Part shown: positions 540 to 40,157 of the stretch, piece by piece
Layout: every line of letters starts with the position of its first letter
How positions within the stretch are numbered: position 1 is the stretch's first letter
From: Haliotis rubra
Taxonomy: Eukaryota
Length of the DNA: 64,000 nt
Assembly: GCF_003918875.1 (NCBI RefSeq)
Contig: NW_025767080.1
Location: 2,666,001 to 2,730,000 of the forward strand
Direction of reading: 5' to 3'
Position numbers and translations under genes: made by a program
The notes under the pieces: model-generated
The model's input: the letters and a program-made list of their open reading frames with translations, nothing else
The model's database searches: none
Told to the model about the DNA's origin: nothing

Positions 540-582
540 CAATAACGGCGCTGACAATGACGATAAACAGTGTAACTTTCAT
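540..582 (-). CDS. Copy A, exon 1 only (signal peptide MKVTLFIVIVSAVI) of cvSI-2-like secreted Cys-rich protein; rest of gene lies left of the window
   Basis: ATG at 582, 43 nt, phase-1 donor G|GTGAGT, TATA box at 636-645; same layout as the other exon-1 copies. Confidence 0.8.
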
Positions 583-1619
583 TTTCTGTGGGTTGAGCGA
601 AATGCTTTCAGAGTAATGCCTTCATTCTGTTGATCCTCTTATATACTTTTGCTTCCCGTGATGCTAACACCAATCCCGTGAGCCAGAGTCACGATTTTGT
701 GATTCCATGTACAGCAGCTGCATGCAAGACTTATAATTATCTCCCTGTGGGTGGTCACATCATAACATGTAGATAACTAAGACATGGAGTGCCAAGGTTA
801 CATTGCTTTGATTCATTTGGTTGGATCTGATAACCCAATAGGGAAATGTCTTGTCATGTTTGCTGTTAAAATTAAACGTTTCCACAAATACATAAACAAC
901 ACATTCAAGATTGATTTGTTTTCTCATTTACAATGGGTTAGAAACGGTTACAAAATCAGCATTATTTAAGTCATACCCAGGGCTATACTTCAGACGCCAT
1001 AAAGCTGAAGGCAATGCCACAAAGTTGCGTTACAACACTGCGTTTTTCGTAAATATGGATGAAGAGAGGAAACGTGAGTTTTAAAGCTGTCCATCTTTCA
1101 AATCATGAGCTGAAAAACCTGATACGACTGTACAGTGTTGCGTGGTGAATGAAAGGAACAGAAAACTGTGTTGAGTATACAACTTGAATGTTCAAAACCT
1201 CAGTAAACCTTTCTGCTTGAGATTGGAGGGTATTTCGAAATTTGACGCCTATCTCACAAAACTGAAATTTGATGTAATTTCTTTGTAATTGTTTTTACCT
1301 GTAATATGTGTTCGTGTGGGTTATTCAGGGGAACAATTACTGTTTTGCAACGGGTGCCTCCGGTGCGACATGATAGCGAACACTATTTGACAGTGATTCA
1401 AAAATACAGGCTCATGACTGTATATCTAATCACTGTAATGTTTGACGGGTAAGATTTTCTTATTGACTTCGTGATAATATTGTTATCTTTGTACATTCTC
1501 CCACCATGCGTATGTTCTATCTACATATATTCACTCTGTGCATTGACTGAGCATTCACCTCGTGAAGGAGCAAGAATTAGTTCCAATTATATCGTAAAAA
1601 GGCCCACGTACAATTAAAA

Positions 1620-3572: not shown

Positions 3573-5749
3573 TTATTTCCCTCTGAAAGTAAAGATGTAA
3601 GTGATGAGTGACGTTTTCAATCTTCTTTTACCAGAAATTACACATTGAGTACGGACAGTAATATGGATATTAACGTTTGTATAATGACACGTCTACCCTG
3701 TGCGCAACCACCAGGTGTGCCTCCATATTGTGTCCCTACAATGAAATCTGTTTTAGCAGATAATCGAGACCTAATTACTCTTGCTGGGACTTACTTCGAA
3801 ACTAGCTTCAGCTGATGTGAATGTTAAATGTAAATACAGTATAAATGAAGAGTTTTGTATCTTTTTGTCACCAAGATGAAATAAAAGAAGCATACGAAGC
3901 AAACAAATTGATAGTCTAGTTTAACGTGATACACAGGCAGCCTTAATTTTGGTTGTATTTCTTATGTAAAAGAAACGTAAAACATAATCATTGTTCACTT
4001 TTCCACTTTCGTAAGAGCATCATTGTGTGATGGGCACAAACATGTTCTCCAAATGGTCAATCATGATGCTGAGAATAGTTACTTTCATGCCTGGTCTGGC
4101 CTGTTCATCACGACCAGACGAAGTCAATGAACAATTTAATGGCCATTTAACACACACACACACACACACACACCCCACCCCACCCCACACACCCCACCCC
4201 ACCCCTTTACTTACACGCCAAGTCCAAAACCACGTCCACAAAGACAGTGGGCGTCAAAGCAGTGGCGTTCTGAATGGCTGTCTCTACACTGACAGCTGCC
4301 GCAGTCAAAGCGGGCGGTACAAGCGGCTGAAATATGAACGTCCCTCTTGGTCACCATAGTACATATACAGCTCTCAGTGGTGTGATTCGTGAAGATTCCG
4401 TCGTATGCTGAGCCAATGAAGCCCTACAATTATCCAAACCGCCAGTATCATATCAAGCCACTCATGTTTGCACTTTGGGGACTTGGAGTAGTGACTTCCG
4501 CCGCACTCAGCAATATCCCACCTATATGGCGGCGGTCTGTAGATAATCGAGTCTGGACCAGACAATCCAGTGATCAACAACATGAGCATCGATCTGCGCA
4601 ATTGGGAACCGATGTGTCAACCAAGTCAGCGAGCCTGACCACCCGATCCCGTTAGTCGCCTCTTACGACAAGCATGGGTTACTGAAGATTATTTCTAACC
4701 CGGATCTTCACGGGTTAAGTAAGATCGTTTACTTTGTCTTCTTTGGTGCTTCAATCTGAGTGTGAGGGTTTGAATCTCGGATGTGACTCAACAGCGAAAA
4801 GGTATCAGAATTGTGTACTTTATTCAGAAAGTGTAATTCCATATGTATCACGTTACATTTGATCACTTTCTGAAAAGAATTGTGTTTACTTGTGGTTAGT
4901 TCTCTTTTTTCCTCTTTTTGGTATAGGCGAATCTTTCCTTAATAATACATTCACAGATGAAATTTGACGACTGTAGTAAATTTATGTTGTTGACTCACAT
5001 ACTTGAAAGGCAGGAACCAACATTGGCTGCAACCAGACAGGTGCATTGTCCATGTGAGCAGGCAAGCTTTGAGGAACTGTCACATGTCAGGTGATTACAG
5101 TCACCATCATCTGTACATTGCTCGCTGTAGATCACAGCTGATACAAAGAAAGGAACAACATCCTATCATTTACATTAACTTCAGGGCTGCGTGATCTCTG
5201 TAGCGCTCACGGCTTACTCTTTCAAACAACGTTTGTTGAGAGAGTCAGTCTAGTTTTACGGCGCTTTTAGCAATATTCCAGCAAATCATGGCAGGGACAC
5301 CAGAAATGGGCTTCACATATTGTACTCGTGTGGGGAATCGAACCCATGTCTCAGCGTGACGAGCGAACGCTTTAACCACTGGAATAACCCATCGCCCCCA
5401 CGTTTGTTCAATGGAGTGGATGCATGAGGTTTAACTCAAGTGGGTTTATTGGGCTACGCTCGTATCTCACACTACAGCCCATGAAGAACATGTGGTTTGT
5501 CAGTGGGCAAGTGAGGTGGGTATGGGACTGGGTTTCCGTTAGGGTGAGGTGGGTACGGGACTGGGTTCCCGTTAGGGTGAGGTTCATTCACTCACAGATA
5601 TAAAGCACGGAAAACGAGCAGTACAAATGCATTAATGTTGTATATTATGTTTAAATATTAAATGTCACAAACTAAGATATGAACGTGGTTACTGTCTTCT
5701 ACTCACCAACAGAGGCGCTGACAATGACGAGAAACAGTGTAACTTTCAT
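3573..5749 (-). CDS. Copy B (type 1), cvSI-2-like secreted Cys-rich protein, 99 aa: MKVTLFLVIVSASVAVIYSEQCTDDGDCNHLTCDSSSKLACSHGQCTCLVAANVGSCLSTACTARFDCGSCQCRDSHSERHCFDAHCLCGRGFGLGVGK
   Basis: Exons 5707-5749, 5003-5137, 4215-4326, 3573-3582; all GT-AG and phase-compatible; upstream TATA box; AATAAA at 3519-3524; Cys spacing recalls the cvSI/I84 family (recognition, not a search). Confidence 0.85.
4490..4715 (-). mobile_element. SINE-like repeat with Nin-like core (catgcttgtcgtaagaggcgactaa) in intron 2 of B; copies at ~29430-29660, 36600-36830, 43748-43977, 45378-45624, 46775-47938 (split), 54865-55104, 56660-57070 (split)
   Basis: Multiple dispersed homologous copies in both orientations, several ending in (ACTC)n-type tails. 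Confidence 0.8.
5240..5400 (-). mobile_element. tRNA-derived SINE in intron 1 of B; copies at ~48581-48745 (+) and ~57950-58096 (+)
   Basis: A-box and B-box (GTGGTTAAAGCG...GGTTCGAATCCC) followed by a shared body and short-repeat tail. Confidence 0.8.
5511..5583. repeat. 33-bp minisatellite, ~2.2 units
   Basis: gtgaggtgggta(t/c)gggactgggtt(t/c)ccgttagg repeated. Confidence 0.8.
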
Positions 5750-5800
5750 GTCTGAGAGTTGAGCAAATGCTTTCAGAGTAATGTCTTCATTCGGTTGATC

Positions 5801-5930
5801 CTCTTATATACCTCTTTTGCCCGTGATACCAACACCAATCCCGAGAGCCACAGCCACGATGTTGTGATTCTATGCACAGCAGCTGCATGCAAGACTTGTC
5901 TTCCCGTGGGCGGTTGTGTTATGACATGTA
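5801..5930 (-). promoter_or_regulatory. Conserved proximal promoter of the array genes (TATATAAGAG, CCAAT, CAGCTG, GC-rich box); also upstream of A, D, E, F, G
   Basis: ctcttatata...aacaccaatcccg...cagcagctgcatgcaag occurs ~50-170 nt upstream of every exon-1 ATG. Confidence 0.7.
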
Positions 5931-8288
5931 GATAAAGGACACATGCGGTATGCAGGTAACCTTCCACTATTGACCTCTCGGAGTGCAATCTAGCCATGTG
6001 TATTGTTATTGCATAAATATTATTCTTGAAGATCTAGAAACAGCACAAAGAATTGAATTGGATCTCCAGTTAGGAAGCATCCTCAAGATGACAATAAATA
6101 CACCACTAAAACAACGTTGACTCTTCTACGGAAATAGAATCCGTATGATCAATCCACGCAATAATTACATACACACCAAACGCAACATGTTTCTGTAAAA
6201 CCATATCGATCACGATAACCAATGAGAGAATAATGAAACATTTTATTGTATGGTTCTTCTTCATAGTTCACTGAAAGCAGCAGAATATAATAATTTAGAT
6301 GATTGCTCTTCTTATCATTGACATGTAAAATAAATGACAAGTACACACTCCAAGGTTGAACCCGAGATCACACATTTCAGGCTTTCGTGAATCATTTTTT
6401 TTTACGTCTCACATGAAATTTAAACGTTACAAAATCACTGTGAAATACAGTACATTTCAGTACAGGGTATTGCGTCGGGCATTTGATTATGTCGTTAATT
6501 ACCGGATTATCTGATCTTTTATGTCTTTAGTTACAAAGATTCCGCGTCATATAACAGGCATATCAAAAGTGTTCTGGGACACAATAAAAAGACTATTTTG
6601 TACCTCTGTGCATTGATCTAAAGATGATACTTATGAAGCTGTTTCACTGGTCGCATGTATTTCAAGTGAGTTAATCAGTGGAAGGGAATTGGTTTGGGAC
6701 CCATTATTGGACAATGTCACATCATTGATACACCAGAAGATAATGTAAACAGAGGCGGCACAACCTTTTTCCATATTCATAAGATATCTCTGCTAAAAGC
6801 AGAGTCGATTGTACAATTGCGACCATATCATGAGCATATGCTTGTTTCAGCAGTATTACAGCTGTATGATGTTGTTTGTATTCAGTGATTGTCACCATGC
6901 GATACGATGACAGTGCATGTATTTATGAATCACTATGAAATAATGATGATACCAGATGTTTGCGAAAAGGGGAGCGTACCCTGTCCCACCGGTGGCACCC
7001 GTCATAAACAGACTCCCGTATTTTCAAGCAGCAATGTTGCAGAAATTCATACCAAACAATTACTAGTACCCAGTAAGAAGTGCACATTTGGTTGCCATGG
7101 TGTTGCCAACTTCCTGACCCAACTTTTTATCCAAAAGGTTTCAATTTACCCTGAAATTCAGCATTCACTTAATGTTTTCATTGATATTTGCTTTCAGCTT
7201 GGGCAAATTGCCCTGAACTATAGTCATGGTCATTCATCACCACGTTTGGTTGATCAAGAAATGAAGTCTTTCCTTTGTAAACCTCTATATATTTGGTGCG
7301 TGAAAAAGACATGTTTAAAGTTGTCATCTAGCTAACAGAAATGTATCCCATTTTCAAAGGGATTATCATCGTATTTTACATGTTAGAATATATGTTTTGA
7401 TACCTACTTAATACCTGATTGCGACATAAAAATATTTCTAACTGATAATTTCATTTTGATCCTATTTCAATCCTATTTTAAGTCGAAATGTGTTGATACA
7501 TATGTTAAATTTGGGATTACACTTTCTCAGTAAAGTACCCATTCTAGGAGACAGCGATGGCTCAGTGGGTTAGATGGCTGACTTTGTGTGCTGGCAATTA
7601 GGTGCCTGACGCTGAGAGTATGGGTTTCAGTAGATGGCAGTTGTGTAATCTGAAAGGTTCTTCATCTTTAATTAGAAAGGAAACGCATCAGCACACTTTG
7701 AAACAATTTACTATATTCAGTTGAATGTGCATTTTCATTTAATTTGTTTAACACAAGGATGATACTTCCTACGCGACACATCATGCTCTCTGGACATAAA
7801 TTATGGTAATACTGATTGTCGAACGTTCATGAGGGGGACGTTCCGATCAAGCCCTGGCTTGACCACTGCTATCACAGCTCTACACCTTGACACAAACTCA
7901 GTATGTCTACGGGCCATCATACTCATTTATTCCCTCAGAGGTCGCTGCTGTAGCCAGATTGTGTAGTGAAATGCTATAGTCCCGTAAAACTAGCAAGTAC
8001 AAATCCATATATTGTATCGGGATCGTTGGAGGGTTGGCTACAAACCCGGAATACCCATGGGATATATTCTATAATTGGAAGCATGGAAACCAACACAAAC
8101 GAGTTAACTGTATTTGCAGATTTATTTTACATGTATACATGTATGGATCCACGTGATATGGAGTCTTTCCATGGGGTTTCTCATTTATTTCCCTCTGAAA
8201 GTGAACAGGCAAGTTCCTGTGAGGGGCATAACCATAACAAACATCACATAAGGTATTCATTGACATTTACTACTTAAGATTGTAAGTA

Positions 8289-8478
8289 TTTGGGAGTACA
8301 CTTTCACAATTAAGTACAGATTCTAGTACTTTTGTTGGGTTGCGTTCCATCCGGGATTCGAACCCACACCCTCAGTCAGGCACCTAATCGCCAGCACACA
8401 AAGTCAGCCGCCTAACCCACCCGCGGTGGCAATAAAGGTACTAGAATCTGTATTTTACTGGGAAAATGTAATCCCAAA
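8289..8478. mobile_element. ~190-bp element with ~41-bp TIRs around a tRNA-like head; copies ~24012-24201, 31491-31680, 38666-38855; partial at ~7510-7625 and ~23230-23345
   Basis: tttgggagtacactttc...agattctagtac is inverted at the right end; internal minus-strand B-box GGTTCGAATCCC. Confidence 0.65.
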
Positions 8479-8586
8479 CATGTGTTTCAATTGACCACTT
8501 TCTAAATGGCATTGTGTATTCATAAATGCTTAGTTATTTTGCAATTAATCGTTCCCGTTTGGAGTCAAACGGTCTATAGATGACTT

Positions 8587-8626
<40 letters not shown>

Positions 8627-8652
8627 TAGATAGATAGATAGATAGATAGATA
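8587..8652. repeat. (GATA)n microsatellite in intron 3 of type-2 genes (also ~24306-24360, 31786-31827, 38960-39003)
   Basis: Directly visible. Confidence 0.95.
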
Positions 8653-10573
8653 CTTTCATCCACAAATGACCCGTCCATAATGACGCTATACTTACACCCC
8701 TGGTCCACCAGGTCCCGATGGACCATGTCCACAAAGACAGTGGCCGTCAAAGCAATGACGTTCTTGATGGCTGTCTCTACAATTACAGCTGTCGCAGTCG
8801 GCGCGGGCGGTACATGTGGCTGAAATATGAACGTCCCTCTTGGTCACCACAGTACATATACAGCTCTCAGTGGTGTGATGTGATTAGATAGCTCCTGTCG
8901 TGTGCTTGGTCAATGAATTCCTACAATTATCTAAACCGTCGGTATCAAGCTTGCACAAAAAATGGACTTTTGCGATTTGGAATTGTGACTTCAACATTTG
9001 TTGAAGTCGTGGTGGCTGAGTGAATAGGTCGCTTATCTTGTGCACGTCTTAGGTGCCTCACTCTCTTCCAAACCACTCTCTAAAATCGTGTATACTTGCT
9101 GTCACACCTTTGGCAAAGTTTCTTATTGCAGTGTCTTTCCTAAATAATACCTTCACGGAAGAACTTTGCCGAGTTCAGTTATACAGACCGTTATTTTGTT
9201 AATTGACATACCTGAAAAGCAGGTACCAGCATTGGCTGCAACCAGACAGGTGCATTGTCCATGAGAGCAGGCCAGCTTTGAGGAACTGTCACATGTCACG
9301 TGAGTACAGTCACTATCATCCCTGCACCCCTCGCTGGATATCACCGCTGTATAACAAAAATACCTGGATCCGCCCATGTTGAGTGGCGAGAAAAAAGGAA
9401 TAGAGAACTGTGTTGAGTATACAAACTGAATATTCAAAACCTCAGTGAACCTTTCTGCTTGAGATTGGAGGGTATTTCCAAATTTGACGCCTATCTGACA
9501 AAACTGAAATTTGATGTAATTTCTTTGTAATTGTTTTTACCTGTAGTATGTGTGAACAATTACTGTTTTGCAACGGGTGCCTCCGGTGCGACATGATAGC
9601 GAACACTATTTGACAGTGATTCATAAATACAGGCTCATGACTGTATACCTAATCACTGTAATGTTTGACGGGTAAGATTTTCTTATTGGCTTCGTGATAA
9701 TATTGTTATCTTTGTACATTCTCCTACCATGCGTTGTGTAAGTATGTTCTATCTACATATATTCACTCTGTGCATTGACTGAGCATTCACCTCGTGAAGA
9801 AGCAAGAATTAGCTCGGATTATTTCGTAAAAAGGCTCACGTACAATTAAAAAAATTAAAAACTTGTGTTATTATAAGATAGATGCAATTGACAATCAGAT
9901 TCATATGTATAAATAACGCAATGGCAATGCTTCCTTAACATAATTAGAACAATTTGTTGCTGTTGAAAAATTGCTACATTATAATGTGTTCAAAACATAT
10001 TGCTGATCATTGTAATATGGTAATGCTTTAAAATACAGCGCACGTCATGATAAACTTTACGTTTAAATAGGAAATGAAATTCATTTTCTACAAAAATATC
10101 ATTACAAATATTACAAAGTCTTTGGTGCCTCGGAACTCCATCAAATCTCACACATAAATGTCGTTTGCTGATTTGTTGAGCGCCCTTCTATTATGTTCAA
10201 TGTACCCCGCTTTACAAGCGACTAACATTTCGTAGTAGTAATTTCTTTATCTCGAATAACTTTGAATCACGTATGATGTACGTAAATTGCCGGTGTTTTG
10301 CGAATGCAAATCGATGGAAGGGAGATAATTCTAAATTTGTTTTTCTTGTCGTCTGGTACTCCATACTATGATCCGATACCCATGCTTCAAACAGTTCAAA
10401 ATTACCATTGAGGTGATTGCTCTTTTTTCCACTCACATGCAAAATAGCTGACGCATAAACAGAATGCACAAGGACAAGTGTAATACCCATATCACATGCA
10501 CAGTCAAGTTAATTTCAGGCTTTTATGCAGCCTTTTTGTACTTGTTCTTTTTTTATTAACGTCTCACGTTAAA

Positions 10574-23700: not shown

Positions 23701-23895
23701 CTAGCAAATACAGATCCATATATTGTATCGGGATCGTTTGAGGGTTGGCTACAAACCCGGAATACCCATGGAATATATTCCGTAATTGGAAGCATGGAAA
23801 CCAACACAAACGAGTTAACTGTTTTAGCAGATTTATTTTACATGTATATATGTATGGATCCACATAATATCGAGTCTTTCCATGGGGTTTCTTCT

Positions 23896-26474: not shown

Positions 26475-26867
26475 ATAAATAGAGAATCTCACCCAAGTGT
26501 CTTCTGATATCAATTATATCAACACGAGTTGATAAAGTTACAAATATCCGAGGCTTGCCGAGGATATTTTTACTTTATCGACGAGTGTTGATATATTTGA
26601 TATCAGAAGACACGAGGGTGAGATTCTATTTATCATCCAAAATCACTCTTCATTAATTCTCAATGAAAAATGTACATCTCTGAACATGGTACTGCCATTA
26701 CACTTGCAGTGCAGCGATGTCATAGCATTGTGACGTCATCAAGTACATGACGTCATAGCATTGTCAGGGCATTGTACAAAATCTACTGTCAAAACGATAT
26801 CTCCTAGGAGATATCGTTTGATCTCACACAAGCGATATCTCCTGTGGAACACAGTTTTGAATGATAA
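26475..26867. mobile_element. Hairpin-headed element (hairpin 26483-26627) present only in the first triplication unit
   Basis: Long palindrome; empty site at ~41190. Confidence 0.75.
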
Positions 26868-26870
26868 TAT

Positions 26871-27262
26871 ACAATTATAGACTCTTGTAGAGGTCGATAT
26901 CAGTTTTTATTGACCTGAGTAAAACAATATCGACCGAGCTTGCGAGGTCGATATTGTTTTTCTCAGGTCAATAAAAACCGATATCGACCTCTACAAGAGT
27001 CTATAATTGTTTTATTATATAATGAAAGAGAAACGGGTTTTAACATAAACTTTTAATGCACACATTGTGCCATCTATCCGAGTGATCTGATTGGCTGAAA
27101 AGCGGGGGAAGCCCCTTCTTACGGGATTCCTTGTCTATTTTTAGTAACCCAAGTCAATATCGTAATTTATCAGAAAACTCAAGTCAATATCATGTTTTGT
27201 AGTCAATCATGTGACGGTATTTTGACCAATCGTGGTACAGGAAAAATACTACCTATATAATA
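26871..27262. mobile_element. Hairpin-headed element (hairpin 26871-27010); apex-deleted copies at ~34040-34430 and ~41200-41580
   Basis: acaattatagactcttgtagaggtcgatatc...gatatcgacctctacaagagtctataattgt. Confidence 0.75.
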
Positions 27263-29797
27263 AAAGCCGTTATCCATAAAACATGGCATGCGTTCATGTT
27301 CGTGCAACTTTTAAATGCCTTTTAAGACCTTCGTGTCATTAGATACAGACGTGGATTTTCACCGAGAATTCCTTTATTTCAATTTAATCAAATTTCCTCT
27401 ATACACCCTGCTTCAACATTGCAATGTGGCATGTAAACACAGAAGAACGGGGTGGATACCAACGTCACTCCACTGCACATACAAGGTATGCCTTTGGGGA
27501 ACCGAACCCCTATTGTGTATTAATATCATGTATTTTATTAACAAACAGAACTCCTTGTTAACAAGCGTTTGCATTTTGGAAACCACTTTCTTCTGTATTC
27601 AGATTCACATGCATAAAGAAACTGCTCATGGAGAAGGAGAGCACAACTGGTGCTCCTGGGGATGCCTCCGTCCTGTGTGAATATCTTGCCTCCAAATGTT
27701 ATTGCAAATCAAAGAACAAGAGATTTGCATTTTCAAGAAGGTAGGAAAACCTCAACTCATTTTGAAAGGTCAAAGATGTGTGCGTATGATTCAAAATACG
27801 GCTTTGTGCCGTGCAACTACCGCGCGTTCTGTTAGACAATAAATGCATAGATAAGACTTTGGTAATCAGTAAATATGCTATCGTGGGACTGACCCTGACA
27901 TCTGGCCACCAGGTTTTTCGAAACATGAGACTAGCAACAAGTTTTAACAGGAATTTACCATACTTGTTGCGTCAAAGATGACACTCATCGACGACTTCTT
28001 GTTGGATCGAGATTCCAACAGTTTTTATTATTATTTCACTTTTCTTGTTGTACAGCAACTCATATAATATGTCATTTAACATATGTTTCATTAAAAAAAT
28101 TCAGATAATTTAGTACATCAGTAAACTAAGTTTCATCGAAAAGGATACTTCAATAAAATGGTTCAAAGCATACAGCTTATGGCAACCAATGTCATACATC
28201 GATAAAACAAAGTTTCATCAAAAAGGGTATTTGAATAGAATGGAGACTTCAACATGCAGTTGGACAATTGTTCTAACGCTTCTCAATTCAGTGATCCTAC
28301 AAAAAAATAAACTTTCAACAACACACATATGAACTTATTCACACAAGTGACCATACCTTGCATTTTGTTTATTTCAAGACGTGATGAACAAACAGCCAAA
28401 TCCATAGGTGTGACAAATCATATGATATCCAATCAGACTGTGTTTTGGGAGCAAACGGACTGATGTAAAGCTTTCCCTAGTTTCAATCATGTCAAACTAT
28501 TTGTGTTATATTTTATTGCTGCGTTTCTTATCAGTTTCTATCCCACTCCAGATAGCCACGATCGTATTGTTAGATAGAAAATCTCTTGTTGTGAGTACGT
28601 TTGGATAATTGTGGTTGTGGGCATATAGCATGACTGGTGTATTTGCAGAGATATTTTACACTCTGTTATCGTGGAAAGGAAAACTAGGCTGCAAAATTGA
28701 CGATTATCTTGGACAATAGGATTTTGTTGTGTTTCATCGTGAATCATTCTTTGTTTGTATAGATTCATATATAAAGTACTTGGCTATAGCTCGATATATG
28801 TGTCACCATTTGCCTGTTGTCTTAATTTGCTAATTTGTTAACAATCTGGATATAGATTATAATTTGTCATCTTACATGCAAATACTTTGACGAAATGGGA
28901 AACACAATGCTGCAGTCTTCTTACAAGTACAATGGGCCAAAGGCTATGAATATACAAGTAGGAAAATTAAGTCGCAAATATTCAAGTAAACAATCTGTGG
29001 AGAGGTCAATCAATGGCTGTCAAGTTTCAATACTGTTTCCTCTTATATATAAGAATAAACACCGTAGATGGGATGAAACATTACAAATTCAAAAAGATTG
29101 TCTTTTCTGTCTTCTTTTTGTTAATACCCCAAAAGCGTTACGACATTTAAACCCTCTCCAATATTACTGCTGTGTGTTTTAAAAGGTGGAGTTTTTCAGA
29201 CATTTCAACCCACGTGGTTCCTGGATATAGGTCAGCACCTATACGGCACTGTGATCACAATGTGCTGATTCTACAGCGTAAACAGCGTGAAAAACGTGTT
29301 GAGATCATTTCAGCTGTTTATCGGTATTCCAGGCCATACGGACTTGCTGTGGCCAGATCGTGATTTGGGTGCTTTGGACTAGTTTTTGTGAAATGTCGGG
29401 ATTGTTGTCATTTCATTACAGATATACACGACCCGCTAAGATCGGGGTTAAAACTGAGCAAGCATGAGAACTGAGCAACCTATGCTTGTCGTAAGAGGCG
29501 ACTAACGGGATGGACAGGTTCGCTGACCTGGTTGACGCATGTCATCGCATCGCAGTTCGAAGCTCATGGTGTAATTCCCTGGCTTGTCTGGTCCAGATTA
29601 TTTACCGGTGCCATATAGCTGGGATATTGCTACGTTCGGCATTAAACAATAAACAAACAACAGATGTAAAGATGTTTGGAAGGGAATTTTCAGGGTTGAC
29701 GTTCTCTATTACTTCAATCACTATAAAATGTCAAGCTTAATCCGACATGCTGTGACGGGTCGGCTTCTGTGTAAACAGAATATCGAAATATAATTTA

Positions 29798-30445
29798 CAC
29801 AAGAACTTAATTAAGCACCCCTGTACATTTGCAATGATATGTTTTCAACACGTACATAAAACTTCTCGTGGTGCCCACGATTGAGTGTTTCTGACCCGTA
29901 TGATCCTTTGAAAAAACGACAAAATGATTGTAATCCATGTTGATTTTATGNNNNNNNNNNNNNNNNNNNNNNNNNNNNNNNNNNNNNNNNNNNNNNNNNN
30001 NNNNNNNNNNNNNNNNNNNNNNNNNNNNNNNNNNNNNNNNNNNNNNNNNNNNNNNNNNNNNNNNNNNNNNNNNNNNNNNNNNNNNNNNNNNNNNCTGGAA
30101 TGTTTAATGGTGAATTTATTGGTGAATGTAAACAAGTCATTCAAAATGTCATTTTGCGTGTCTTACACGATTCAAGGTCAATACCGAGTGCAACCTCCTT
30201 GTGACTGTATGACAGTCAGCACTCTCCCCCTCATACCCCCATCATGTCAACCTCCTGATCCTCTGAAGGGGCAGTCTACGCCATTCCTCGTGTAAAGCAG
30301 CATCCAGTTAGGCCAAGTTCTGTACAGGAGGATCCCTTTGTTAAAGACGACGCCCAATCATGTCCCAGATGTGCTCCAAAGGGTTTAGATCGGGACTCAT
30401 TCAATCGTGAGATATGTCAGGTGGTGCTTAACTAAGTTCTTTGTG
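29798..30445 (-). mobile_element. Non-autonomous Tc1 derivative (~650 bp) with TA TSD; copies 36968-37620 and 44115-44733
   Basis: TIR caca(a)agaactta(a/g)ttaagcacc; internal SPDLNPLEHIWD...HEEWRRLP...QGGCTRY* remnant. Confidence 0.85.
29951..30094. other. N run (144 nt); second N run at 37117-37270
   Basis: The equivalent position in unit 3 is the (CA)n tract. Confidence 0.95.
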
Positions 30446-31374
30446 TAATACTTTACTGACATGCTTCACAAGAGACTCATCACACGCGAAAACGTAGACA
30501 ATAGAATTCTGTCATAATTGGTACATCAAATCTACTGAGGGAAGGAGACAGGTTGGTACTATTTTCTGACACGATTCTTCGTGTGAGGGTTTTAATACCC
30601 TAATTGTCTTGTTTCCTCGAATCAACAATGTCAGCAAATAAGAAAGGACAAATATAGCATTGGTACCAATGGCTTTGACTTTGATACGTGGTCTGCAGTA
30701 TGTTGGACCTATTCAACCGTGAATTTGCATCATGAGCTACCAAGACCATATTCTCCGCATGTATGAAAAACGCATAACTGATATTTTATAATATATGAAA
30801 CTGACGATTGTTCTTCAGATTTGAAATATTGCTGAACATACAGCGAAACGTTTTGACTGACAAGTACGGCAAAAAACATAATGTGAACGGGTACGGTGCT
30901 GACATTCCTAAATCTGATATTCGTTCCCAAGAATAGCATTCTGATACGCCAAAAAGGGACACAACTCTGCATAGGGAATTAGAGCGTCTAAGACACCTCA
31001 TCGTATCTCAAATCGTGTAGCTAGGTTGTGAGGTTCAGGCTCACATTGTACATGTTTCTCCATAGAATCATCATCTTTGACACAAATTCAATAAGTCTAC
31101 GAACCACCATATTCCTTTATTCCATCAAGTGTCACGACTGTCACTAGACTGTGTAGTGAAAAGCAATAGTCACGTAAAACTAGCAAATACAGATCCATAT
31201 ATTGTATCGGGATCGTTTGAGGGTTGGCTACAAACCCGGAATACCCATGGAATATATTCCGTAATTGGAAGCATGGAAACCAACACAAACGAGTTAACTG
31301 TTTTAGCAGATTTATTTTACATGTATATATGTATGGATCCACATAATATCGAGTCTTTCCATGGGGTTTCTTCT

Positions 31375-32983
31375 TTATTTCCCTCTGAAAGTAAACAGGT
31401 AGGTTCCAGTGATGGGTATGCAATAACAAACATCAGATAAGGTATTCATTCACATTTACTACTTTGGATTGTGAGTTAACACATGTTATATTTGGGAGTA
31501 CACTTTCTCAATTAAGTACAGATTCTAGTACTTCTGTTGGGTTGCGTTCTATCCGGGATTCTAACCCACACCCTCAGTCAGGCACCTAATCGCCAGCACA
31601 CAAAGTCAGCTGCCTAACCCATCCGCTGTGGCAATAAAGGTACTAGAATCTGTAATTTACGGTGAAAATGTAATACCAAACATAATACGTGTTTCAATTG
31701 ACCACTTTCTTAATGGCATTGTGTATTCATAATGTTTTAATTATTTTGCAATTAATCGTTCCAGTTCAGAGACAAACGGTGACCGATAGATAGACAGATA
31801 GACAGACAGATAGATAGATAGAATAGATCACGCTACTAGCTACTTACACGCCTGGTCCACCAGGTCCAGTTGGACCACGTCCACAAAGACAGTGGCCGTC
31901 AAAACAGTGACGTTCGTCGTGGCTGTCTCTACAACCACAGCTGTCGCAGTCGGCGCGGGCGGTACATGTGGCTGAAATATGAACGTCCCTCTTGGTCACC
32001 ACAGTACATATACGGCTCTCAGTGGTGTGATGTGATTAGATAGCTCCTGGCGTATGCTTGCTCAATGAATCCCTACAATTATCTAAACCGTCGGTATCAA
32101 GCTTGCACAAACATGGACTTTTGCGATTTGGAATTGTGACTTTCACATTTGTTGAAGTCGTGGTGGCTGAGTGAATAGATCGCTTACCTTGTGCACGTCT
32201 TAGGTGCCTCACTCTGTTCCAAACCACTCTCTATAGCCGTGTATACTTGTTGTCGCACCTTTGGCAACGTTTGTTATTGCAGTGTCTTTCCTAAATAATA
32301 CCTTCACGGAAGAACTTTGCCGAATACAGTTATACAGACGTTATTTGGTTAATTGACATACCTGAAAAGTTTACTAAGAAAGTGTAATTATCACATTACA
32401 TTTCATCACCTGCTGAAAGGCAGTGTGTATACTTGTGGTCATTCTGTTTGCCTCTTTCTGGTATAGGCGAATCTTACGTGAATAATACGCTGACGAATGA
32501 AAATTGCCGATTGTTAGTTATTAAGACTGTTATTTTGTTAATTGGCATACCTGAAAAGCAGGTACCAGGATTGGCTGCAACCAGACAGGTGCATTGTCCA
32601 TGAGAGCAGGCAAGCCTTGAGGAACTGTCACATGTCACGTGAGTACAGTCACTATCATCCCTGCACGCCTGGCTGGATATCACCGCTGTATAACAAAAAT
32701 ATATACCATTTCATTAAAATTCGGGCTACCCGATGTACAGGGCACAGGTCACACTTTTGTTGAATGTAGCAAGTGGATGGATGAGCATATTTTGCAGGTT
32801 TGACTCCAGAGGGTTTCAGACTTCTCTCACATATCCAGCTTTGAAAAGGAGCAACACAAATTATGTATAGCTGTTTTATATCATTTAAATACTAAAACCT
32901 AATATCTAAAATATGAATGTCGTTACTATCTTCTACTCACCAATAACAGAGCTGACAATGACGAGAAATAGTGTAAGTTTCAT
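31375..32983 (-). CDS. Copy F (type 2), 103 aa: MKLTLFLVIVSSVIAVISSQACRDDSDCTHVTCDSSSRLACSHGQCTCLVAANPGTCFSATCTARADCDSCGCRDSHDERHCFDGHCLCGRGPTGPGGPGVGK
   Basis: Exons 32941-32983, 32551-32685, 31848-31971, 31375-31384; TATA 33036-33045; AATAAA 31311-31316. Confidence 0.85.
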
Positions 32984-35900
32984 GTCTGTGGGATGAACGA
33001 AATGCTTTCAGAATAATGTCTTCATTCGGTTGATCCTCTTATATACTTATCCTTCCCGTGATACCAACACCAATCCCGTGAGCTAGAGTCACGATGTTGT
33101 GATTCTTTGTACAGCAGCTGCATGCAAGACTTATCTCCTTGTGGGCGGTTACGTCATGACATTGAGATAATACATGCAGCACATAGGTTACATTGCTTTG
33201 ATTTATTTGGTTGGATCTGATACCCAATAGGGCAATGTCTTGTCATATTTACGGTTAAAATTAAACGTTCCTACAAGTGAATAAACAACACATACAAAGT
33301 TAATTTGTTTTCTCATTTACAATGGGTTAGAAACGGTTACAAAAATCGGTATTCTTTCAGTCATTCTGAGGGCTATATTTTCAGACTTCATAAAACTGAA
33401 GGCAATGTCACTCAGTTGCCTTACAAAACTGTATCCCCGTGAATAAGAATGAAGAGTGGAGATGTGAGCTTTAAAGCTTTCCATATTACAAATCAAGAGT
33501 AGGAAAACTGACATGGCAGTGCTGTGTTAGGTCATGTAGCGTTCATAGTTTAATTCAGAGTGTGAAAACGTAATAGAGAACTGTGTTGAATGTAAACTAT
33601 TCAAAACTCAGTAAACCTTTCCAAAGGTTTATAGTTGAGATTGGAGGGCATTTTCAAATTTGACGCGTAACTGACAAAAGTGACGTTTGATGTAATTTTT
33701 ACCTGTAGTATGTGTTCCTGTGTGTTATTCAAGGGAACTTTTACTGGTTTGCAGCGGGTGCCTCCGGTGCGGCACGATAGCAAACACTATTTGGGAGTGA
33801 TTCCAAAACACAGGTTCATGACTGTATATCTAATCAAAGTAATGTTTGATAGGTAACATTTTCTATCTAATATCTATCGTGATTATATTGATATCTTTGT
33901 ATATTCTCCCACCATGCGCTGAGTAAGCATGTTCTGTCTACATATATTCACCCTGTTCATTGACTCAGCATTCACTTCCTAAAGGAGCAAGAATTAGCTC
34001 TGAAACGTCGCATAAAGAATGAAAAGAATGATATATACGAGTTATAGATCCGAGGCTTCTTGTAGAGTGTTGTCGATATCGGTTTGTATTGACCTGAGTA
34101 AAACAATATCGACCGACCTGATAATATTTTCTCAGGTCAATAAAACCGATATCGACCTCTACAAGAGTCTATAATTGTTTTATTATATAATGAAAGAGAA
34201 ACGGGTTTTAACATAAACTTTTAATGCACACATTGTGCCATCTATCCGAGTGATCTGATTGGCTGAAAAGCGGGGGAAGCCCCTTCTTACGGGATTCCTT
34301 GTCTATTTTTAGTAACCCAAGTCAATATCGTAATTTATCAGAAAACTCAAGTCAATATCATGTTTTGTAGTCAATCATGTGACGGTATTTTGACCAATCG
34401 TGGTACAGGAAAAATACTACCTATATAATAAAAGTCGTTATCCATAAAACATGGCATGCGTTCATGTTCGTGCAACTTTTAAATGCCTTTTAAGACCTTC
34501 GTGTCATTAGATACAGACGTGGATTATCACCGAGAATTCCTTTATTTCAATTTAATCAAATTTCCTCTATACACCCTGCTTCAACATTGCAATGTGGCAT
34601 GTAAACACAGAAGAACGGGGTGGATACCAACGTCACTCCACTGCACATACAAGGTATGCCTTTGGGGAACCGAACCCCTATTGTGTATTAATATCATGTA
34701 TTTTATTAACAAACAGAACTCCTTGTTAACAAGCGTTTGCATTTTGGAAACCACTTTCTTCTGTATTCAGATTCATATGCATAAAGAAACTGCTCATGGA
34801 GAAGGAGAGCACAACTGGTGCTCCTGGGGATGCCTCCGTCCTGTGTGAATATCTTGCCTCCAAATGTTATTGCAAATCAAAGAACAAGAGATTTGCATTT
34901 TTCAAGAAGGTAGGAAAACCTCAACTCATTTTGAAAGGTCAAAGATGTGTGCGTATGATTCAAAATACGGCTTTGTGCCGTGCAACTACCGCGCGTTCTG
35001 TTAGACAATAAATGCATAGATAAGACTTTGGTAATCAGTAAATATGCTATCGTGGGACTGACCCTGACATCTGGCCACCAGGTTTTTCGAAACATGAGAC
35101 TAGCAACAAGTTTTAACAGGAATTTACCATACTTGTTGCGTCAAAGATGACACTCATCGACGACTTCTTGTTGGATCGAGATTCCAACAGTTTTTATTAT
35201 TATTTCACTTTTCTTGTTGTACAGCAACTCATATAATATGTCATTTAACATATGTTTCATTAAAAAAATTCAGATAATTTAGTACATCAGTAAACTAAGT
35301 TTCATCGAAAAGGATACTTCAATAAAATGGTTCAAAGCATACAGCTTATGGCAACCAATGTCATACATCGATAAAACAAAGTTTCATCAAAAAGGGTAAT
35401 TGAATAGAATGGAGACTCCAACATGCAGTTGGACAATTGTTCTGACGCTTCTCAATTCAGTGATCCTACAAAAAAGTTTAAACTTTCAACAACACACATA
35501 TGAACTTATTCACACAAGTGACCATACCTTGCATTTGTTTATTTCAAGACGTGATGAACAAACAGCCAAATCCATAGGTGTGACAAATCATATGATATCC
35601 AATCAGACTGTGTTTTGGGAGCAAACGGACTAATGTAAAGCTTTCCCTAGTTTCAATCATGTCAAACTATTTGTGTTATATTTTATTGCTGCGTTTCTTA
35701 TCAGTTTCTATCCCACTCCAGATAGCCACGATCGTATTGTTAGATAGAAAATCTCTTGTTGTGAGTACGTTTGGATAATTGTGGTTGTGGGCATATAGCA
35801 TGACTGGTGTATTTGCAGAGATATTTTACACTCTGTTATCGTGGAAAGGAAAACTAGGCTGCAAAATTGACGATTATCTTGGACAATAGGATTTTGTTGT

Positions 35901-38549
35901 GTTTCATCGTGAATCATTCTTTGTTTGTATAGATTCATATATAAAGTACTTGGCTATAGCTCGATATATGTGTCACCATTTGCCTGTTGTCTTAATTTGC
36001 TAATTTGTTAACAATCTGGATATAGATTATAATTTGTCATCTTACATGCAAATACTTTGACGAAATGGGAAACACAATGCTGCAGTCTTCTTACAAGTAC
36101 AATGGGCCAAAGGCTATGAATATACAAGTAGGAAAATTAAGTCGCAAATATTCAAGTAAACAATCTGTGGAGAGGTCAATCAATGGCTGTCAAGTTTCAA
36201 TACTGTTTCCTCTTATATATAAGAATAAACACCGTAGATGGGATGAAACATTACAAATTCAAAAAGATTGTCTTTTCTGTCTTCTTTTTGTTAATACCCC
36301 AAAAGCGTTACGACATTTAAACCCTCTCCAATATTACTGCTGTGTGTTTTAAAAGGTGGAGTTTTTCAGACATTTCAACCCACGTGGTTCCTGGATATAG
36401 GTCAGCACCTATACGGCACTGTGATCACAATGTGCTGATTCTACAGCGTAAACAGCGTGAAAAACGTGTTGAGATCATTTCAGCTGTTTATCGGTATTCC
36501 AGGCCATACGGACTTGCTGTGGCCAGATCGTGATTTGGGTGCTTTGGACTAGTTTTTGTGAAATGTCGGGATTGTTGTCATTTCATTACAGATATACACG
36601 ACCCGCTAAGATCGGGGTTAAAACTGAGCAAGCATGAGAACTGAGCAACCTATGCTTGTCGTAAGAGGCGACTAACGGGATGGACAGGTTCGCTGACCTG
36701 GTTGACGCATGTCATCGCATCGCAGTTCGAAGCTCATGGTGTAATTCCCTGGCTTGTCTGGTCCAGATTATTTACCGGTGCCATATAGCTGGGATATTGC
36801 TACGTTCGGCATTAAACAATAAACAAACAACAGATGTAAAGATGTTTGGAAGGGAATTTTCAGGGTTGACGTTCTCTATTACTTCAATCACTATAAAATG
36901 TCAAGCTTAATCCGACATGCTGTGACGGGTCGGCTTCTGTGTAAACAGAATATCGAAATATAATTTACACAAGAACTTAATTAAGCACCCCTGTACATTT
37001 GCAATGATATGTTTTCAACACGTACATAAAACTTCTCGTGGTGCCCACGATTGAGTGTTTCTGACCCGTATGATCCTTTGAAAAAACGACAAAATGATTG
37101 TAATCCATGTTGATTTNNNNNNNNNNNNNNNNNNNNNNNNNNNNNNNNNNNNNNNNNNNNNNNNNNNNNNNNNNNNNNNNNNNNNNNNNNNNNNNNNNNN
37201 NNNNNNNNNNNNNNNNNNNNNNNNNNNNNNNNNNNNNNNNNNNNNNNNNNNNNNNNNNNNNNNNNNNNNNCTGGAATGTTTAATGGTGAATTTATTGGTG
37301 AATGTAAACAAGTCATTCAAAATGTCATTTTGCGTGTCTTACACGATTCAAGGTCAATACCGAGTGCAACCTCCTTGTGACTGTATGACAGTCAGCACTC
37401 TCCCCTCATACCCCCATCATGTCAACCTCCTGATCCTCTGAAGGGGCAGTCTACGCCATTCCTCGTGTAAAGCAGCATCCAGTTAGGCCAAGTTCTGTAC
37501 AGGAGGATCCCTTTGTTAAAGACGACGCCCAATCATGTCCCAGATGTGCTCCAAAGGGTTTAGATCGGGACTCATTCAATCGTGAGATATGTCAGGGGGT
37601 GCTTAACTAAGTTCTTTGTGTAATACTTTACTGACATGCTTCACAAGAGACTCATCACACGCGAAAACGTAGACAATAGAATTCTGTCATAATTGGTACA
37701 TCAAATCTACTGAGGGAAGGAGAGAGGTTGGTACTATTTTCTGACACGATTCTTCGTGTGAGGGTTTTAATACCCTAATTGTCTTGTTTCCTCGAATCAA
37801 CAATGTCAGCAAATAAGAAAGGACAAATATAGCATTGGTACCAATGGCTTTGACTTTGATACGTGGTCTGCAGTATGTTGGACCTATTCAACCGTGAATT
37901 TGCATCATGAGCTACCAAGACCATATTCTCCGCATGTATGAAAACGCATAACTGATATTTTATAATATATGAAACTGACGATTGTTCTTCAGATTTGAAA
38001 TATTGCTGAACATACAGCGAAACGTTTTGACTGACAAGTACGGCAAAAAACATAATGTGAACGGGTACGGTGCTGACATTCCTAAATCTGATATTCGTTC
38101 CCAAGAATAGCATTCTGATACGCCAAAAAGGGACACAACTCTGCATAGGGAATTAGAGCGTCTAAGACACCCTCATCGTATCTCAAATCGTGTAGCTAGG
38201 TTGTGAGGTTCAGGCTCACATTGTACATGTTTCTCCATAGAATCATCATCTTTGACACAAATTCAATAAGTCTACGAACCACCATATTCCTTTATTCCAT
38301 CAAGTGTCACGACTGTCACTAGACTGTGTAGTGAAAAGCAATAGTCACGTAAAACTAGCAAATACAGATCCATATATTGTATCGGGATCGTTTGAGGGTT
38401 GGCTACAAACCCGGAATACCCATGGAATATATTCCGTAATTGGAAGCATGGAAACCAACACAAACGAGTTAACTGTTTTAGCAGATTTATTTTACATGTA
38501 TATATGTATGGATCCACATAATATCGAGTCTTTCCATGGGGTTTCTTCT

Positions 38550-40157
38550 TTATTTCCCTCTGAAAGTAAACAGGTAGGTTCCAGTGATGGGTATGCAATA
38601 ACAAACATCAGATAAGGTATTCATTCACATTTACTACTTTGGATTGTGAGTTAACACATGTTATATTTGGGAGTACACTTTCTCAATTAAGTACAGATTC
38701 TAGTACTTCTGTTGGGTTGCGTTCTATCCGGGATTCTAACCCACACCCTCAGTCAGGCACCTAATCGCCAGCACACAAAGTCAGCTGCCTAACCCATCCG
38801 CTGTGGCAATAAAGGTACTAGAATCTGTAATTTACGGTGAAAATGTAATACCAAACATAATACGTGTTTCAATTGACCACTTTCTTAATGGCATTGTGTA
38901 TTCATAATGTTTTAATTATTTTGCAATTAATCGTTCCAGTTCAGAGACAAACGGTGACCGATAGATAGACAGATAGACAGACAGATAGATAGATAGAATA
39001 GATCACGCTACTAGCTACTTACACGCCTGGTCCACCAGGTCCAGTTGGACCACGTCCACAAAGACAGTGGCCGTCAAAACAGTGACGTTCGTCGTGGCTG
39101 TCTCTACAACCACAGCTGTCGCAGTCGGCGCGGGCGGTACATGTGGCTGAAATATGAACGTCCCTCTTGGTCACCACAGTACATATACGGCTCTCAGTGG
39201 TGTGATGTGATTAGATAGCTCCTGGCGTATGCTTGCTCAATGAATCCCTACAATTATCTAAACCGTCGGTATCAAGCTTGCACAAACATGGACTTTTGCG
39301 ATTTGGAATTGTGACTTTCACATTTGTTGAAGTCGTGGTGGCTGAGTGAATAGATCGCTTACCTTGTGCACGTCTTAGGTGCCTCACTCTGTTCCAAACC
39401 ACTCTCTATAGCCGTGTATACTTGTTGTCGCACCTTTGGCAACGTTTGTTATTGCAGTGTCTTTCCTAAATAATACCTTCACGGAAGAACTTTGCCGAAT
39501 ACAGTTATACAGACGTTATTTGGTTAATTGACATACCTGAAAAGTTTACTAAGAAAGTGTAATTATCACATTACATTTCATCAACTGCTGAAAGGCAGTG
39601 TGTATACTTGTGGTCATTCTGTTTGCCTCTTTCTGGTATAGGCGAATCTTACGTGAATAATACGCTGACGAATGAAAATTGCCGATTGTAGTTATTAAGA
39701 CTGTTATTTTGTTAATTGGCATACCTGAAAAGCAGGAACCAGGATTGGCTGCAACCAGACAGGTGCATTGTCCATGAGAGCAGGCAAGCCTTGAGGAACT
39801 GTCACATGTCACGTGAGTACAGTCACTATCATCCCTGCACGCCTGGCTGGATATCACCGCTGTATAACAAAAATATATACCATTTCATTAAAATTCGGGC
39901 TACCCGATGTACAGGGCACAGGTCACACTTTTGTTGAATGTAGCAAGTGGATGGATGAGCATATTTTGCAGGTTTGACTCCAGAGGGTTTCAGACTTCTC
40001 TCACATATCCAGCTTTGAAAAGGAGCAACACAAATTATGTATAGCTGTTTTATATCATTTAAATACTAAAACCTAATATCTAAAATATGAATGTCGTTAC
40101 TATCTTCTACTCACCAATAACAGAGCTGACAATGACGAGAAATAGTGTAAGTTTCAT
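38550..40157 (-). CDS. Copy G (type 2), 103 aa; same as F except GSCFS for GTCFS
   Basis: Exons 40115-40157, 39725-39859, 39023-39146, 38550-38559; TATA 40210-40219; AATAAA 38486-38491. Confidence 0.85.

What the first reader, a model, noticed from the sequence alone, without database searches (positions are those of the whole stretch)
540..40157. Expanding tandem array of seven cvSI-2-like secreted inhibitors in two subtypes
Seen: seven same-strand paralogs. Type 1 (B, D) has VIYS-E and a GFG(L/P)GV tail. Type 2 (C, E, F, G, and A by its flank) has VISS-E/Q and a longer GP(S/T)GPGGPGV tail. The order 2-1-2-1-2-2-2 implies an older two-gene duplication plus a recent single-gene triplication. 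Established: oyster cvSI proteins (I84) inhibit subtilisin-like pathogen proteases. Inference: a birth-and-death defence locus that ORF callers miss.
Basis: partly seen in the sequence, partly recalled or inferred. Interest (0 to 1): 0.7.

Follow-up and report, generated by a model that had tools for sequence, protein, structure and literature searches.

The report
Abalone cvSI-like protease inhibitor gene cluster
This stretch of the blacklip abalone genome holds part of a large tandem cluster of small secreted, cysteine-rich genes related to the oyster cvSI (MEROPS I84) serine-protease inhibitors; the genes are real, but they are already in the public annotation under that name, so the finding is correct and fairly ordinary.

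Summary
Seven minus-strand paralogs lie at 540-40157 in the order and subtypes described.

What the copies are:
- B, D, E, F and G are intact four-exon genes. Spliced, they equal RefSeq Haliotis rubra proteins of 99, 99, 105, 103 and 103 aa, all named "serine protease inhibitor Cvsi-2-like".
- C has lost its promoter and signal-peptide exon.
- A has only exon 1 in the window. Its body lies 5.5 kb outside, with a conserved Cys changed to Phe and a lost splice donor.

The array is larger than seven. At least 16 genes span about 150 kb of this contig, and a divergent eighth member sits on the + strand at 52.4-54.3 kb.

The family call is supported. An abalone-only profile reaches the cluster holding oyster cvSI-3 (E 5e-6 among 1.8 billion proteins; hhalign 98%). 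The published I84 cysteine pattern, gene layout, size and pI all fit. There are two extra cysteines and a mini-exon that adds Gly-Lys.

The duplication history is supported. Three collinear two-gene units are followed by a 7.17-kb unit repeated three times.

Both gaps are intergenic and sit at the same junction of units 1 and 2. No reading frame crosses them, but the number of units is not proven.

No RNA data were found and inhibition is untested. "ORF callers miss it" is wrong.

The parts
540..582 (-). Gene A, exon 1 (43 nt, signal-peptide start MKVTLFIVIVSAVI). Its promoter block lies just upstream, at 583-800. Exons 2-3 are outside the window, 5.5 kb away. There the copy carries a Cys-to-Phe change (RHFFDGNC) and an exon-3 donor changed from GT to AT.
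3573..5749 (-). Gene B (short-tail type, 99 aa). Exons: 5749-5707, 5137-5003, 4326-4215, 3582-3573 (coding part of exon 4). All introns are GT-AG.
   Evidence: Spliced product is identical to RefSeq protein P0004 (XP_046579912.1):
8185..9346 (-). Copy C (long-tail type). Only exons 2-4 are present: 9346-9212, 8819-8696, 8194-8185. Exon 1, intron 1 and the core promoter are deleted. The sequence just upstream (9377-10148) matches the region beyond A's promoter (1136-1900). Probably a pseudogene.
17602..20719 (-). Gene D (short-tail type, 99 aa). Exons: 20719-20677, 19388-19254, 18810-18699, 17611-17602.
   Evidence: Spliced product is identical to P0039 (XP_046579907.1):
23896..25440 (-). Gene E (long-tail type, 105 aa). 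Exons: 25440-25392 (49 nt, with a 6-nt insert in the signal peptide and a weak donor GTTTTG), 25120-24986, 24503-24380, 23905-23896.
   Evidence: Spliced product is identical to P0035 (XP_046579901.1):
31375..32983 (-). Gene F (long-tail type, 103 aa). Exons: 32983-32941, 32685-32551, 31971-31848, 31384-31375. It differs from G by one residue (Thr for Ser in PG(T/S)CFS).
   Evidence: Spliced product is identical to P0036 (XP_046579906.1):
38550..40157 (-). Gene G (long-tail type, 103 aa). Exons: 40157-40115, 39859-39725, 39146-39023, 38559-38550. A TATA block lies at 40203-40220.
   Evidence: Spliced product is identical to P0001 (XP_046579932.1):
23593..45363 (.). Three tandem units of about 7.17 kb, each with one gene (E, F, G). 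Unit 1 runs from 23593 to gap 1 and on through 31071. Unit 2 runs from 31072 to gap 2 and on through about 38246. Unit 3 runs from about 38247 to 45363.
   Evidence: Self-comparison: F vs G 99.3% identical; E vs F and G 97.7-99%
29951..30094 (.). Assembly gap 1. It is intergenic and sits at the same point of the repeat unit as gap 2. It was not filled.
37117..37270 (.). Assembly gap 2. It is intergenic. Together with gap 1 it bounds a contig (30095-37116) that is exactly one repeat unit.
52364..54251 (+). The last exon was not located.

Best explanation
The window covers the right-hand part of the main family-I84 (cvSI-like) gene cluster of the blacklip abalone, Haliotis rubra.

Gene and protein layout. 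Each intact gene has four exons:
- a 43-nt exon with the start of a signal peptide;
- a 135-nt exon with the first cysteine module (C-x5-C-x4-C-x7-C-x4-C-T-C plus one extra Cys);
- a 112- or 124-nt exon with the second module (plus one extra Cys) and a Gly/Pro-rich tail;
- a mini-exon that adds Gly-Lys and the stop.

The products are about 85-aa acidic peptides with 14 cysteines.

Mechanism (inferred from homology with oyster cvSI-1 and cvSI-2). The peptides are secreted into plasma or digestive fluid. There they bind and block subtilisin-type serine proteases of pathogens.

How the locus grew. It grew by unequal crossing-over: a two-gene unit (short-tail gene + long-tail gene) now present three times, then a 7.17-kb one-gene unit present three times in the assembly. 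Other copies decayed.

What is shown and what is inferred:
- Shown: the gene models, the homology and the duplication structure.
- Inferred: secretion, inhibition and the defence role.
For: - Organism and annotation. The exon-2 search and the profile search return H. rubra RefSeq proteins named Cvsi-2-like, on a contig of 3,450,661 bases, the length of the window's contig.
- Gene models. My spliced models of B, D, E, F and G equal those proteins residue for residue, and all introns are GT-AG.
- Family link. A profile of nine abalone mature peptides, searched against 1.84 billion proteins, gives 9 hits. Every named hit is molluscan and most are named Cvsi-1/2-like. They include the cluster with cvSI-3, AQM52281.1 (E 5.2e-6). 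hhalign of the abalone profile against cvSI-3 gives 98% probability, E 1.6e-13 and 45% identity over 69 columns.
- Published features. The cysteine pattern of PMC9198434 matches all five proteins. Size is 8.8-9.0 kDa and pI 5.7-5.9, both inside the published ranges.
- Exon layout. It matches the published one: a signal-peptide exon, then six conserved Cys per exon, with phase-1 introns.
- Promoter. A 150-bp block with an exact 18-mer TATA box lies before A, B, D, E, F and G, and not before C.
- Duplication structure.
- Related arrays. Black abalone has an even denser array, with identical genes every 3.54 kb.
Against: - No protein from this locus has been assayed.
- Identity to the nearest named oyster member is only about 43-45%.
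- The type member cvSI-2 itself was not retrieved, so it was not aligned directly.
- Pfam has no model for the family. The only sub-threshold hit is Nodulin_late.
- The AlphaFold model is weak (pLDDT 65) and matches no solved fold.
- No RNA run was available, so expression and the exon 3 to exon 4 splice rest on the RefSeq models.
- The count of 7.17-kb units rests on a scaffold with gaps at two of the three junctions.
Confidence: 0.85

Rival explanations
1. The proteins share ancestry with I84 but do something else in abalone. They might be antimicrobial or signalling peptides of the defensin or nodule-cysteine-rich kind, and not protease inhibitors.
For: - Sub-threshold matches of the first module to Pfam Nodulin_late (E 0.006, below the cut-off) and to PDB NCR13 (E 0.2).
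- Each half of the model is a short helix plus a beta hairpin. The best, non-significant, half-length fold matches include scorpion toxins and a knottin.
- The C-terminal Gly-Lys looks like an amidation signal, which is common in bioactive peptides (the reading is my own knowledge).
- There are two extra cysteines compared with assayed members.
Against: - None of those matches is significant.
- The significant relatives that carry a name are I84-type proteins.
- The peptides are acidic (pI 5.7-5.9), unlike most cationic antimicrobial peptides.
- The only members of the family with measured activity are protease inhibitors (PMC9198434, introduction).
Confidence: 0.12
2. F is not a separate gene. 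The 7-kb contig between the two gaps would be a redundant assembly of G, either an allele or a re-assembled copy, so the recent event was a duplication (E, G) and not a triplication.
For: - F is exactly one repeat unit, bounded by N gaps on both sides.
- F and G differ by only 17 substitutions plus small indels in 7 kb, less than typical allelic divergence in such animals (the comparison with allelic divergence is my own knowledge).
- At three F-versus-G differences (30549, 32514, 35470), contigs from two samples carry G's letter only.
Against: - F's private letter at 33387 is present in contigs of two different samples (X1 record 6, X3 record 13). G's private form at 35470 is present too, so two distinct F/G-like sequences exist.
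- The gap estimates (144 and 154) are close to the 118 bases read through at the same junction of the third unit.
- A long-read assembly of a related abalone shows much larger arrays of identical units, so such repeats are real in this family.
- Contigs cannot give copy number, and there was no single-copy baseline.
Confidence: 0.25

Closest known systems
[quoted passage not shown]
   Same: - A signal peptide followed by a small acidic mature peptide.
- The 12 conserved cysteines in the same register, including the C-T-C centre and the H-C-x-D-G-x-C-x-C end.
- Restricted to molluscs.
- Significant profile match to cvSI-3.
   Different: - 14 cysteines, not 12: one extra in each module.
- A longer Gly/Pro-rich tail ending in Gly-Lys.
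- About 43-45% identity.
- No activity data.
- Not aligned directly to cvSI-1 or cvSI-2.
Razor clam scSI-1 to scSI-14 tandem clusters (Liu et al. 2022, PMC9198434)
   Same: - The same exon logic: a signal-peptide exon, then six Cys per exon.
- Tandem clusters with very young pairs beside non-functional copies, one without a signal sequence and one truncated.
- Pairwise Ka/Ks of 0.16-0.57 there against 0.18-0.66 here.
   Different: - A fourth mini-exon here.
- A larger single cluster: at least 16 genes in about 150 kb, against 7 in 52 kb.
- A strongly conserved proximal promoter among seven copies. No shared promoter motif was found in the clam.
Abalone hdhSI-1 and hdhSI-2 of Haliotis discus hannai (Lu et al. 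2021, cited in PMC9198434), and the RefSeq Cvsi-2-like genes of H. asinina, H. cracherodii and H. rufescens
   Same: The same genus-level subfamily, at 58-88% identity in the BLASTP column. Black abalone also has it in tandem arrays.
   Different: The Lu et al. paper is not in the library, so hdhSI-1 and hdhSI-2 could not be compared. The array periods differ: 7.17 kb here against 3.54 kb in H. cracherodii.

Membership tests
MEROPS I84 (cvSI-type serine protease inhibitors) | Significant sequence similarity to a recognised member | tested here: met
   The abalone-only profile finds the cluster containing cvSI-3, AQM52281.1, at E 5.2e-6 in a library of 1.84 billion proteins. hhalign gives 98% probability and E 1.6e-13. 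cvSI-2 itself was not retrieved.
MEROPS I84 (cvSI-type serine protease inhibitors) | Twelve conserved cysteines in the array C-x5-8-C-x4-5-C-x7-9-C-x4-C-T-C-x6-23-C-x5-7-C-x3-6-C-x5-8-C-x4-C-x-C (PMC9198434) | tested here: met
   The pattern matches B, D, E, F and G. Each has two further cysteines, 14 in all.
MEROPS I84 (cvSI-type serine protease inhibitors) | N-terminal signal peptide and a mature peptide of about 7-9 kDa with an acidic pI | tested here: met
   N-terminus is M-K followed by 13 hydrophobic or small residues (mean Kyte-Doolittle 2.5-2.7). Mature part is 8.8-9.0 kDa with pI 5.7-5.9. No signal-peptide predictor was available, so the cleavage site is not fixed.
MEROPS I84 (cvSI-type serine protease inhibitors) | Gene layout: a first exon with part of the signal peptide, a second exon with the first six conserved Cys, a third exon with the last six, and phase-1 introns | tested here: met
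   In addition there is a mini-exon 4 (10 coding nt) that is not described for clam or oyster genes.
MEROPS I84 (cvSI-type serine protease inhibitors) | Slow, tight inhibition of subtilisin-family serine proteases | not testable with these tools
   Needs protein and enzyme assays.
MEROPS I84 (cvSI-type serine protease inhibitors) | Found only in molluscs | tested here: met
   All named hits of three searches are from Haliotis, Crassostrea, Saccostrea, Mytilus, Dreissena, Ruditapes or Mactra. A few unnamed hits come from metagenomes or sequencing runs.

The most novel reading that the evidence does not exclude
Abalones carry a distinct I84 subfamily. Its marks would be a seventh disulfide and a C-terminal Gly-Lys (possible amidation signal), encoded by its own mini-exon whose stop codon lies inside the AATAAA signal. 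This subfamily would be under current selection for copy number and surface variation. Separate species have amplified different units (3 x 7.17 kb here; at least 7 identical genes at 3.54 kb spacing in black abalone). The youngest copies here differ by 4-5 amino-acid changes and no silent change. The drivers could be pathogen proteases such as those of Perkinsus olseni or Vibrio (that link is my own knowledge and was not tested).
Probability: 0.25. Interest if true: 0.45.

Novelty: already known. Interest (0 to 1): 0.2.

Why it matters
I84 inhibitors are among the few mollusc immune effectors with a measured activity against a parasite protease (cvSI-1 against perkinsin). A full map of the abalone cluster shows which copies are intact and which are decayed or doubtful. 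It also shows a shared promoter block. Together these give a ready list of targets for expression and resistance studies in a farmed species. It does not change what is known about the family. The genes are already annotated, and tandem expansion with pseudogene by-products has been described in clams and oysters.

Tried and rejected
- Pfam scan of the exon peptides: no family above cut-off, only Nodulin_late and EGF_2 below it.
- PDB sequence search with the profile: only NCR13, at E 0.2.
- AlphaFold2 with an 18-row alignment: pLDDT 65, pTM 0.49. Foldseek against PDB gave no match at E <= 0.001. I therefore draw nothing on fold or reactive site.
- Exon 2 against exon 3 of G by BLASTP: no significant similarity. 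A weak match (E 4e-5) appears only with the black-abalone copies.
- Sequencing runs: nine holders, all DNA-like and all kept as contigs, none RNA. Laying four of them gave variant letters but no usable depth, no splice joints and no single-copy baseline. Expression and copy number stay open.
- Looking for C's exon 1: no exon-1 match, no TATA block and no promoter block upstream of 9346.
- An 11-mer resembling the TATA block recurs once per 7.17-kb unit (29049, 36219, 43366). Alignment shows it is not a promoter relic.
- The last word-index search, made to fetch cvSI-2 itself, returned other mollusc members but not cvSI-2.
- Lu et al. 2021, on abalone hdhSI-1 and hdhSI-2, is not held in the library.
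- Large ORFs between the genes have no Pfam family.
- The tree of coding sequence alone resolves the long-tail clade (A, C, (E, (F, G))). It does not resolve a short-tail clade. The two-gene-unit history rests on collinearity of the flanks instead.
Full report
**What is in the sequence**

Reading gene G base by base gives these features:
- a TATA box;
- an ATG at 40157;
- a 43-nt first exon that ends G|GTGAGT;
- a 135-nt second exon;
- a third exon with the second cysteine block.

BLAST of these three pieces against the window finds six exon-1 copies (A, B, D, E, F, G) and six copies of exons 2 and 3 (B to G). All have AG and GT at their borders.

Database proteins end in ...GV-GK, not ...GV. 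Exon 3 therefore really ends two bases into the Val codon, at GT|gtaagt. A mini-exon (A GGG AAA TAA, or C GGA AAA TAA in D) lies 456-1,080 bases downstream in all six copies.

With four exons, the spliced products of B, D, E, F and G are 99, 99, 105, 103 and 103 aa. They are identical to five RefSeq proteins.

That joining was done only inside a local script, as an identity check. Searches used single exons by reference, or proteins that the databases returned.

**The gaps**

The N runs are at 29951-30094 and 37117-37270. Both are intergenic:
- each lies about 1.3 kb beyond the last coding base of the gene on its right (F, G);
- each lies more than 4 kb before the ATG of the gene on its left (E, F).

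No exon, intron or frame crosses them.

Self-comparison shows a 7.17-kb unit present three times between 23593 and 45363. Both gaps fall at the same point of units 1 and 2. The third unit is read through at that point, with 118 bases, close to the gap estimates of 144 and 154.

The piece between the gaps (30095-37116, carrying F) is exactly one unit.
- F and G differ at 17 substitutions plus small indels.
- They share 61 substitutions against E. F is therefore G-like throughout and not a mosaic of E and G.

Contigs of four public DNA runs were laid on the F unit.
- At three F-versus-G differences (30549, 32514, 35470), two samples show only G's form. Those F letters look like consensus errors.
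- F's private letter at 33387 is present in two samples, and G's private form at 35470 is present as well.

So two distinct F/G-like sequences exist. Contigs cannot say whether they are neighbours or alleles, and there was no single-copy baseline for depth. I put the chance that F is redundant at about one in four.

**Which copies are intact**

- B, D, F and G have clean models.
- E has a 6-nt insert in the signal-peptide exon and a poor donor (GTTTTG), but RefSeq accepts it.
- C lacks exon 1, intron 1 and the core promoter. The sequence just upstream of its exon 2 (9377-10148) matches the region that lies beyond A's promoter (1136-1900). The two exact promoter blocks occur six times in the window, never near C.
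- A has its promoter and exon 1 in the window. About 5.3 kb of extra DNA sits in intron 1. Its body lies outside the window, with a conserved Cys replaced by Phe and the exon-3 donor changed from GT to AT.
- No protein corresponding to A or C turned up among the database proteins retrieved.

**The array is larger than seven**

The window is G000:C2190:2666001-2730000. Exon searches over the genome, and over 120 kb fetched to the left of the window, show the following:
- four plus-strand genes at 2,558.8-2,590 kb (P1-P4);
- five more minus-strand copies (M1-M5);
- then A to G.

Among the copies to the left:
- M1 has a frameshift in exon 3.
- M2 and M3 have identical coding exons.
- M5 has lost its exon-1 donor.
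- There is also a truncated exon-2 fragment.

It has the same 43-nt and 135-nt exons and the same intron phases.

Elsewhere in the genome only three further matches appear, one on a 38-kb contig and two weak ones.

**Duplication history**

- [B-C] and [D-E] are collinear over about 6.6 kb, at 69-87% identity.
- [M5-A] is collinear with [D-E] too, up to and including the exon-1 region.
- So a short-tail + long-tail pair exists three times, followed by the threefold E unit.
- A tree of the coding exons supports (A, C, (E, (F, G))). It leaves the short-tail genes unresolved.
- Over the whole cluster, the Y/S motif and the tail length are not strictly linked. M4 has LIYS with a long tail, and P1-P4 have LISS with a short tail.
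- Older pairs have dN/dS of 0.18-0.66.
- E, F and G differ by 1-5 amino-acid changes and no silent change. That is too few to test.

**What family it is**

Pfam has nothing above threshold. The word-index search with exon 2 returns H. rubra proteins named "serine protease inhibitor Cvsi-2-like", on a contig of the same length as the window's. This identifies the genome.

Those names are automatic, so I tested the link myself.
- A profile of nine abalone mature peptides was run against 1.84 billion representative proteins. It gave nine hits. All the named ones are molluscan, and most are called Cvsi-1-like or Cvsi-2-like.
- One hit cluster contains AQM52281.1, which PMC9198434 lists as cvSI-3 of Crassostrea virginica.
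- hhalign of the abalone profile against that protein gives 98% probability and E 1.6e-13.
- The cysteine pattern, size, pI and exon layout published for I84 all fit.

There are two differences from the published family: two extra cysteines, one per module, and the Gly-Lys mini-exon. cvSI-2 itself could not be fetched, so that direct alignment is missing.

**How it probably works**

This is inferred from the family. PMC9198434 summarises that cvSI-1 and cvSI-2 are plasma proteins that inhibit subtilisin-type proteases, including perkinsin.

By homology, the abalone peptides would be secreted, folded by seven disulfides into two modules, and would bind such proteases.

The two modules each model as a short helix plus a hairpin. 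The model is weak and matches no solved fold. I therefore cannot name a reactive loop.

The VIYS/VISS motif sits at the end of the signal peptide and may not be part of the mature protein. The tail difference (GFGxGV against GPxGPGGPGV) is the clearer subtype mark.

**Novelty**

- The five intact genes are in RefSeq under the family name.
- Abalone members are cited in the literature.
- Tandem growth with dead copies is described for the razor clam and for oysters.
- A black-abalone assembly shows identical family genes every 3.54 kb.

The finding is right and ordinary.

Noticed in passing
window 52364-54251 (+): A divergent eighth I84-like gene (H), head-to-head with G. Exon 1 is 43 nt (MKVLVFCLCMVVAF, donor GTGAGT), exon 2 is 135 nt and exon 3 is 109 nt ending in the same phase as the others. 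hhalign of exon 2 against the family profile gives 96% probability, E 3e-9. The last exon was not found.
   Followed up: partly
genome C2190:2558825-2666000 (loci L021-L032), left of the window: Ten more family copies: P1-P4 on the + strand, M1-M5 and the body of A on the - strand. M1 has a frameshift in exon 3. M2 and M3 have identical coding exons. M5's exon-1 donor is lost. There is a lone truncated exon-2 fragment at 2647147-2647245.
   Followed up: partly
RefSeq proteins P0038 and P0037 against window exons: Two annotated 'isoforms' mix neighbouring genes. P0038 has the exon-1 peptide of F/G joined to exons 2-4 of D. P0037 has exon 1 of B joined to exons 2-4 of M5. They are either real read-through splicing or an artefact of reads that map to several paralogs.
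   Followed up: no
window 3573-3582, 8185-8194, 17602-17611, 23896-23905, 31375-31384, 38550-38559 (-): In all six copies the stop codon of the mini-exon lies inside an AATAAA hexamer (AAATAAA), so the last exon may be very short. The encoded C-terminal Gly-Lys also ends relatives in Ruditapes and H. rufescens, and Dreissena ends in Gly-Arg-Lys. It looks like an amidation signal.
   Followed up: no
window 583-800, 5750-5967, 20720-20937, 25441-25658, 32984-33201, 40158-40375 (-): The proximal promoter is better conserved than the coding sequence. Long invariant blocks (TCTTGCATGCAGCTGCTGT, CGGGATTGGTGTT, GTATATAAGAGGATCAAC) are shared by both subtypes. The 18-mer TATA block is exact in A, B, D, E, F, G and M5 and occurs nowhere else in the 184 kb examined.
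   Followed up: partly
L034 and L035 (Haliotis cracherodii, JAJLRC010000005.1:13922323-13951399): Identical 105-aa family genes repeat every 3.54 kb, seven per 22-kb locus. Their 90% cluster holds 19 sequences. This is an independent and larger amplification in another abalone.
   Followed up: partly
L034 and L035, exon-3 modules: The exon-2 peptide of G aligns weakly (E 4e-5, 35% identity) to the exon-3 module of the black-abalone genes. This hints that the two cysteine modules arose by an old internal duplication. Within G itself the similarity is not significant.
   Followed up: no
window 30095-30494, 31295-31894, 33895-34494: Summed contig depth is 10,000 to 600,000 in all four runs, against about 700 around them in run X1. 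These are dispersed repeats inside the 7.17-kb unit, one of them in intron 3 of F. Loose-end consensus carries a tRNA-like GGTTCGAACCC box, which suggests a SINE.
   Followed up: no
window 32112: E has a different letter here from F and G, which both read C in the assembly. Contigs from two samples read A at this place. It is a likely consensus error or a polymorphism, in intron 2 of F.
   Followed up: no
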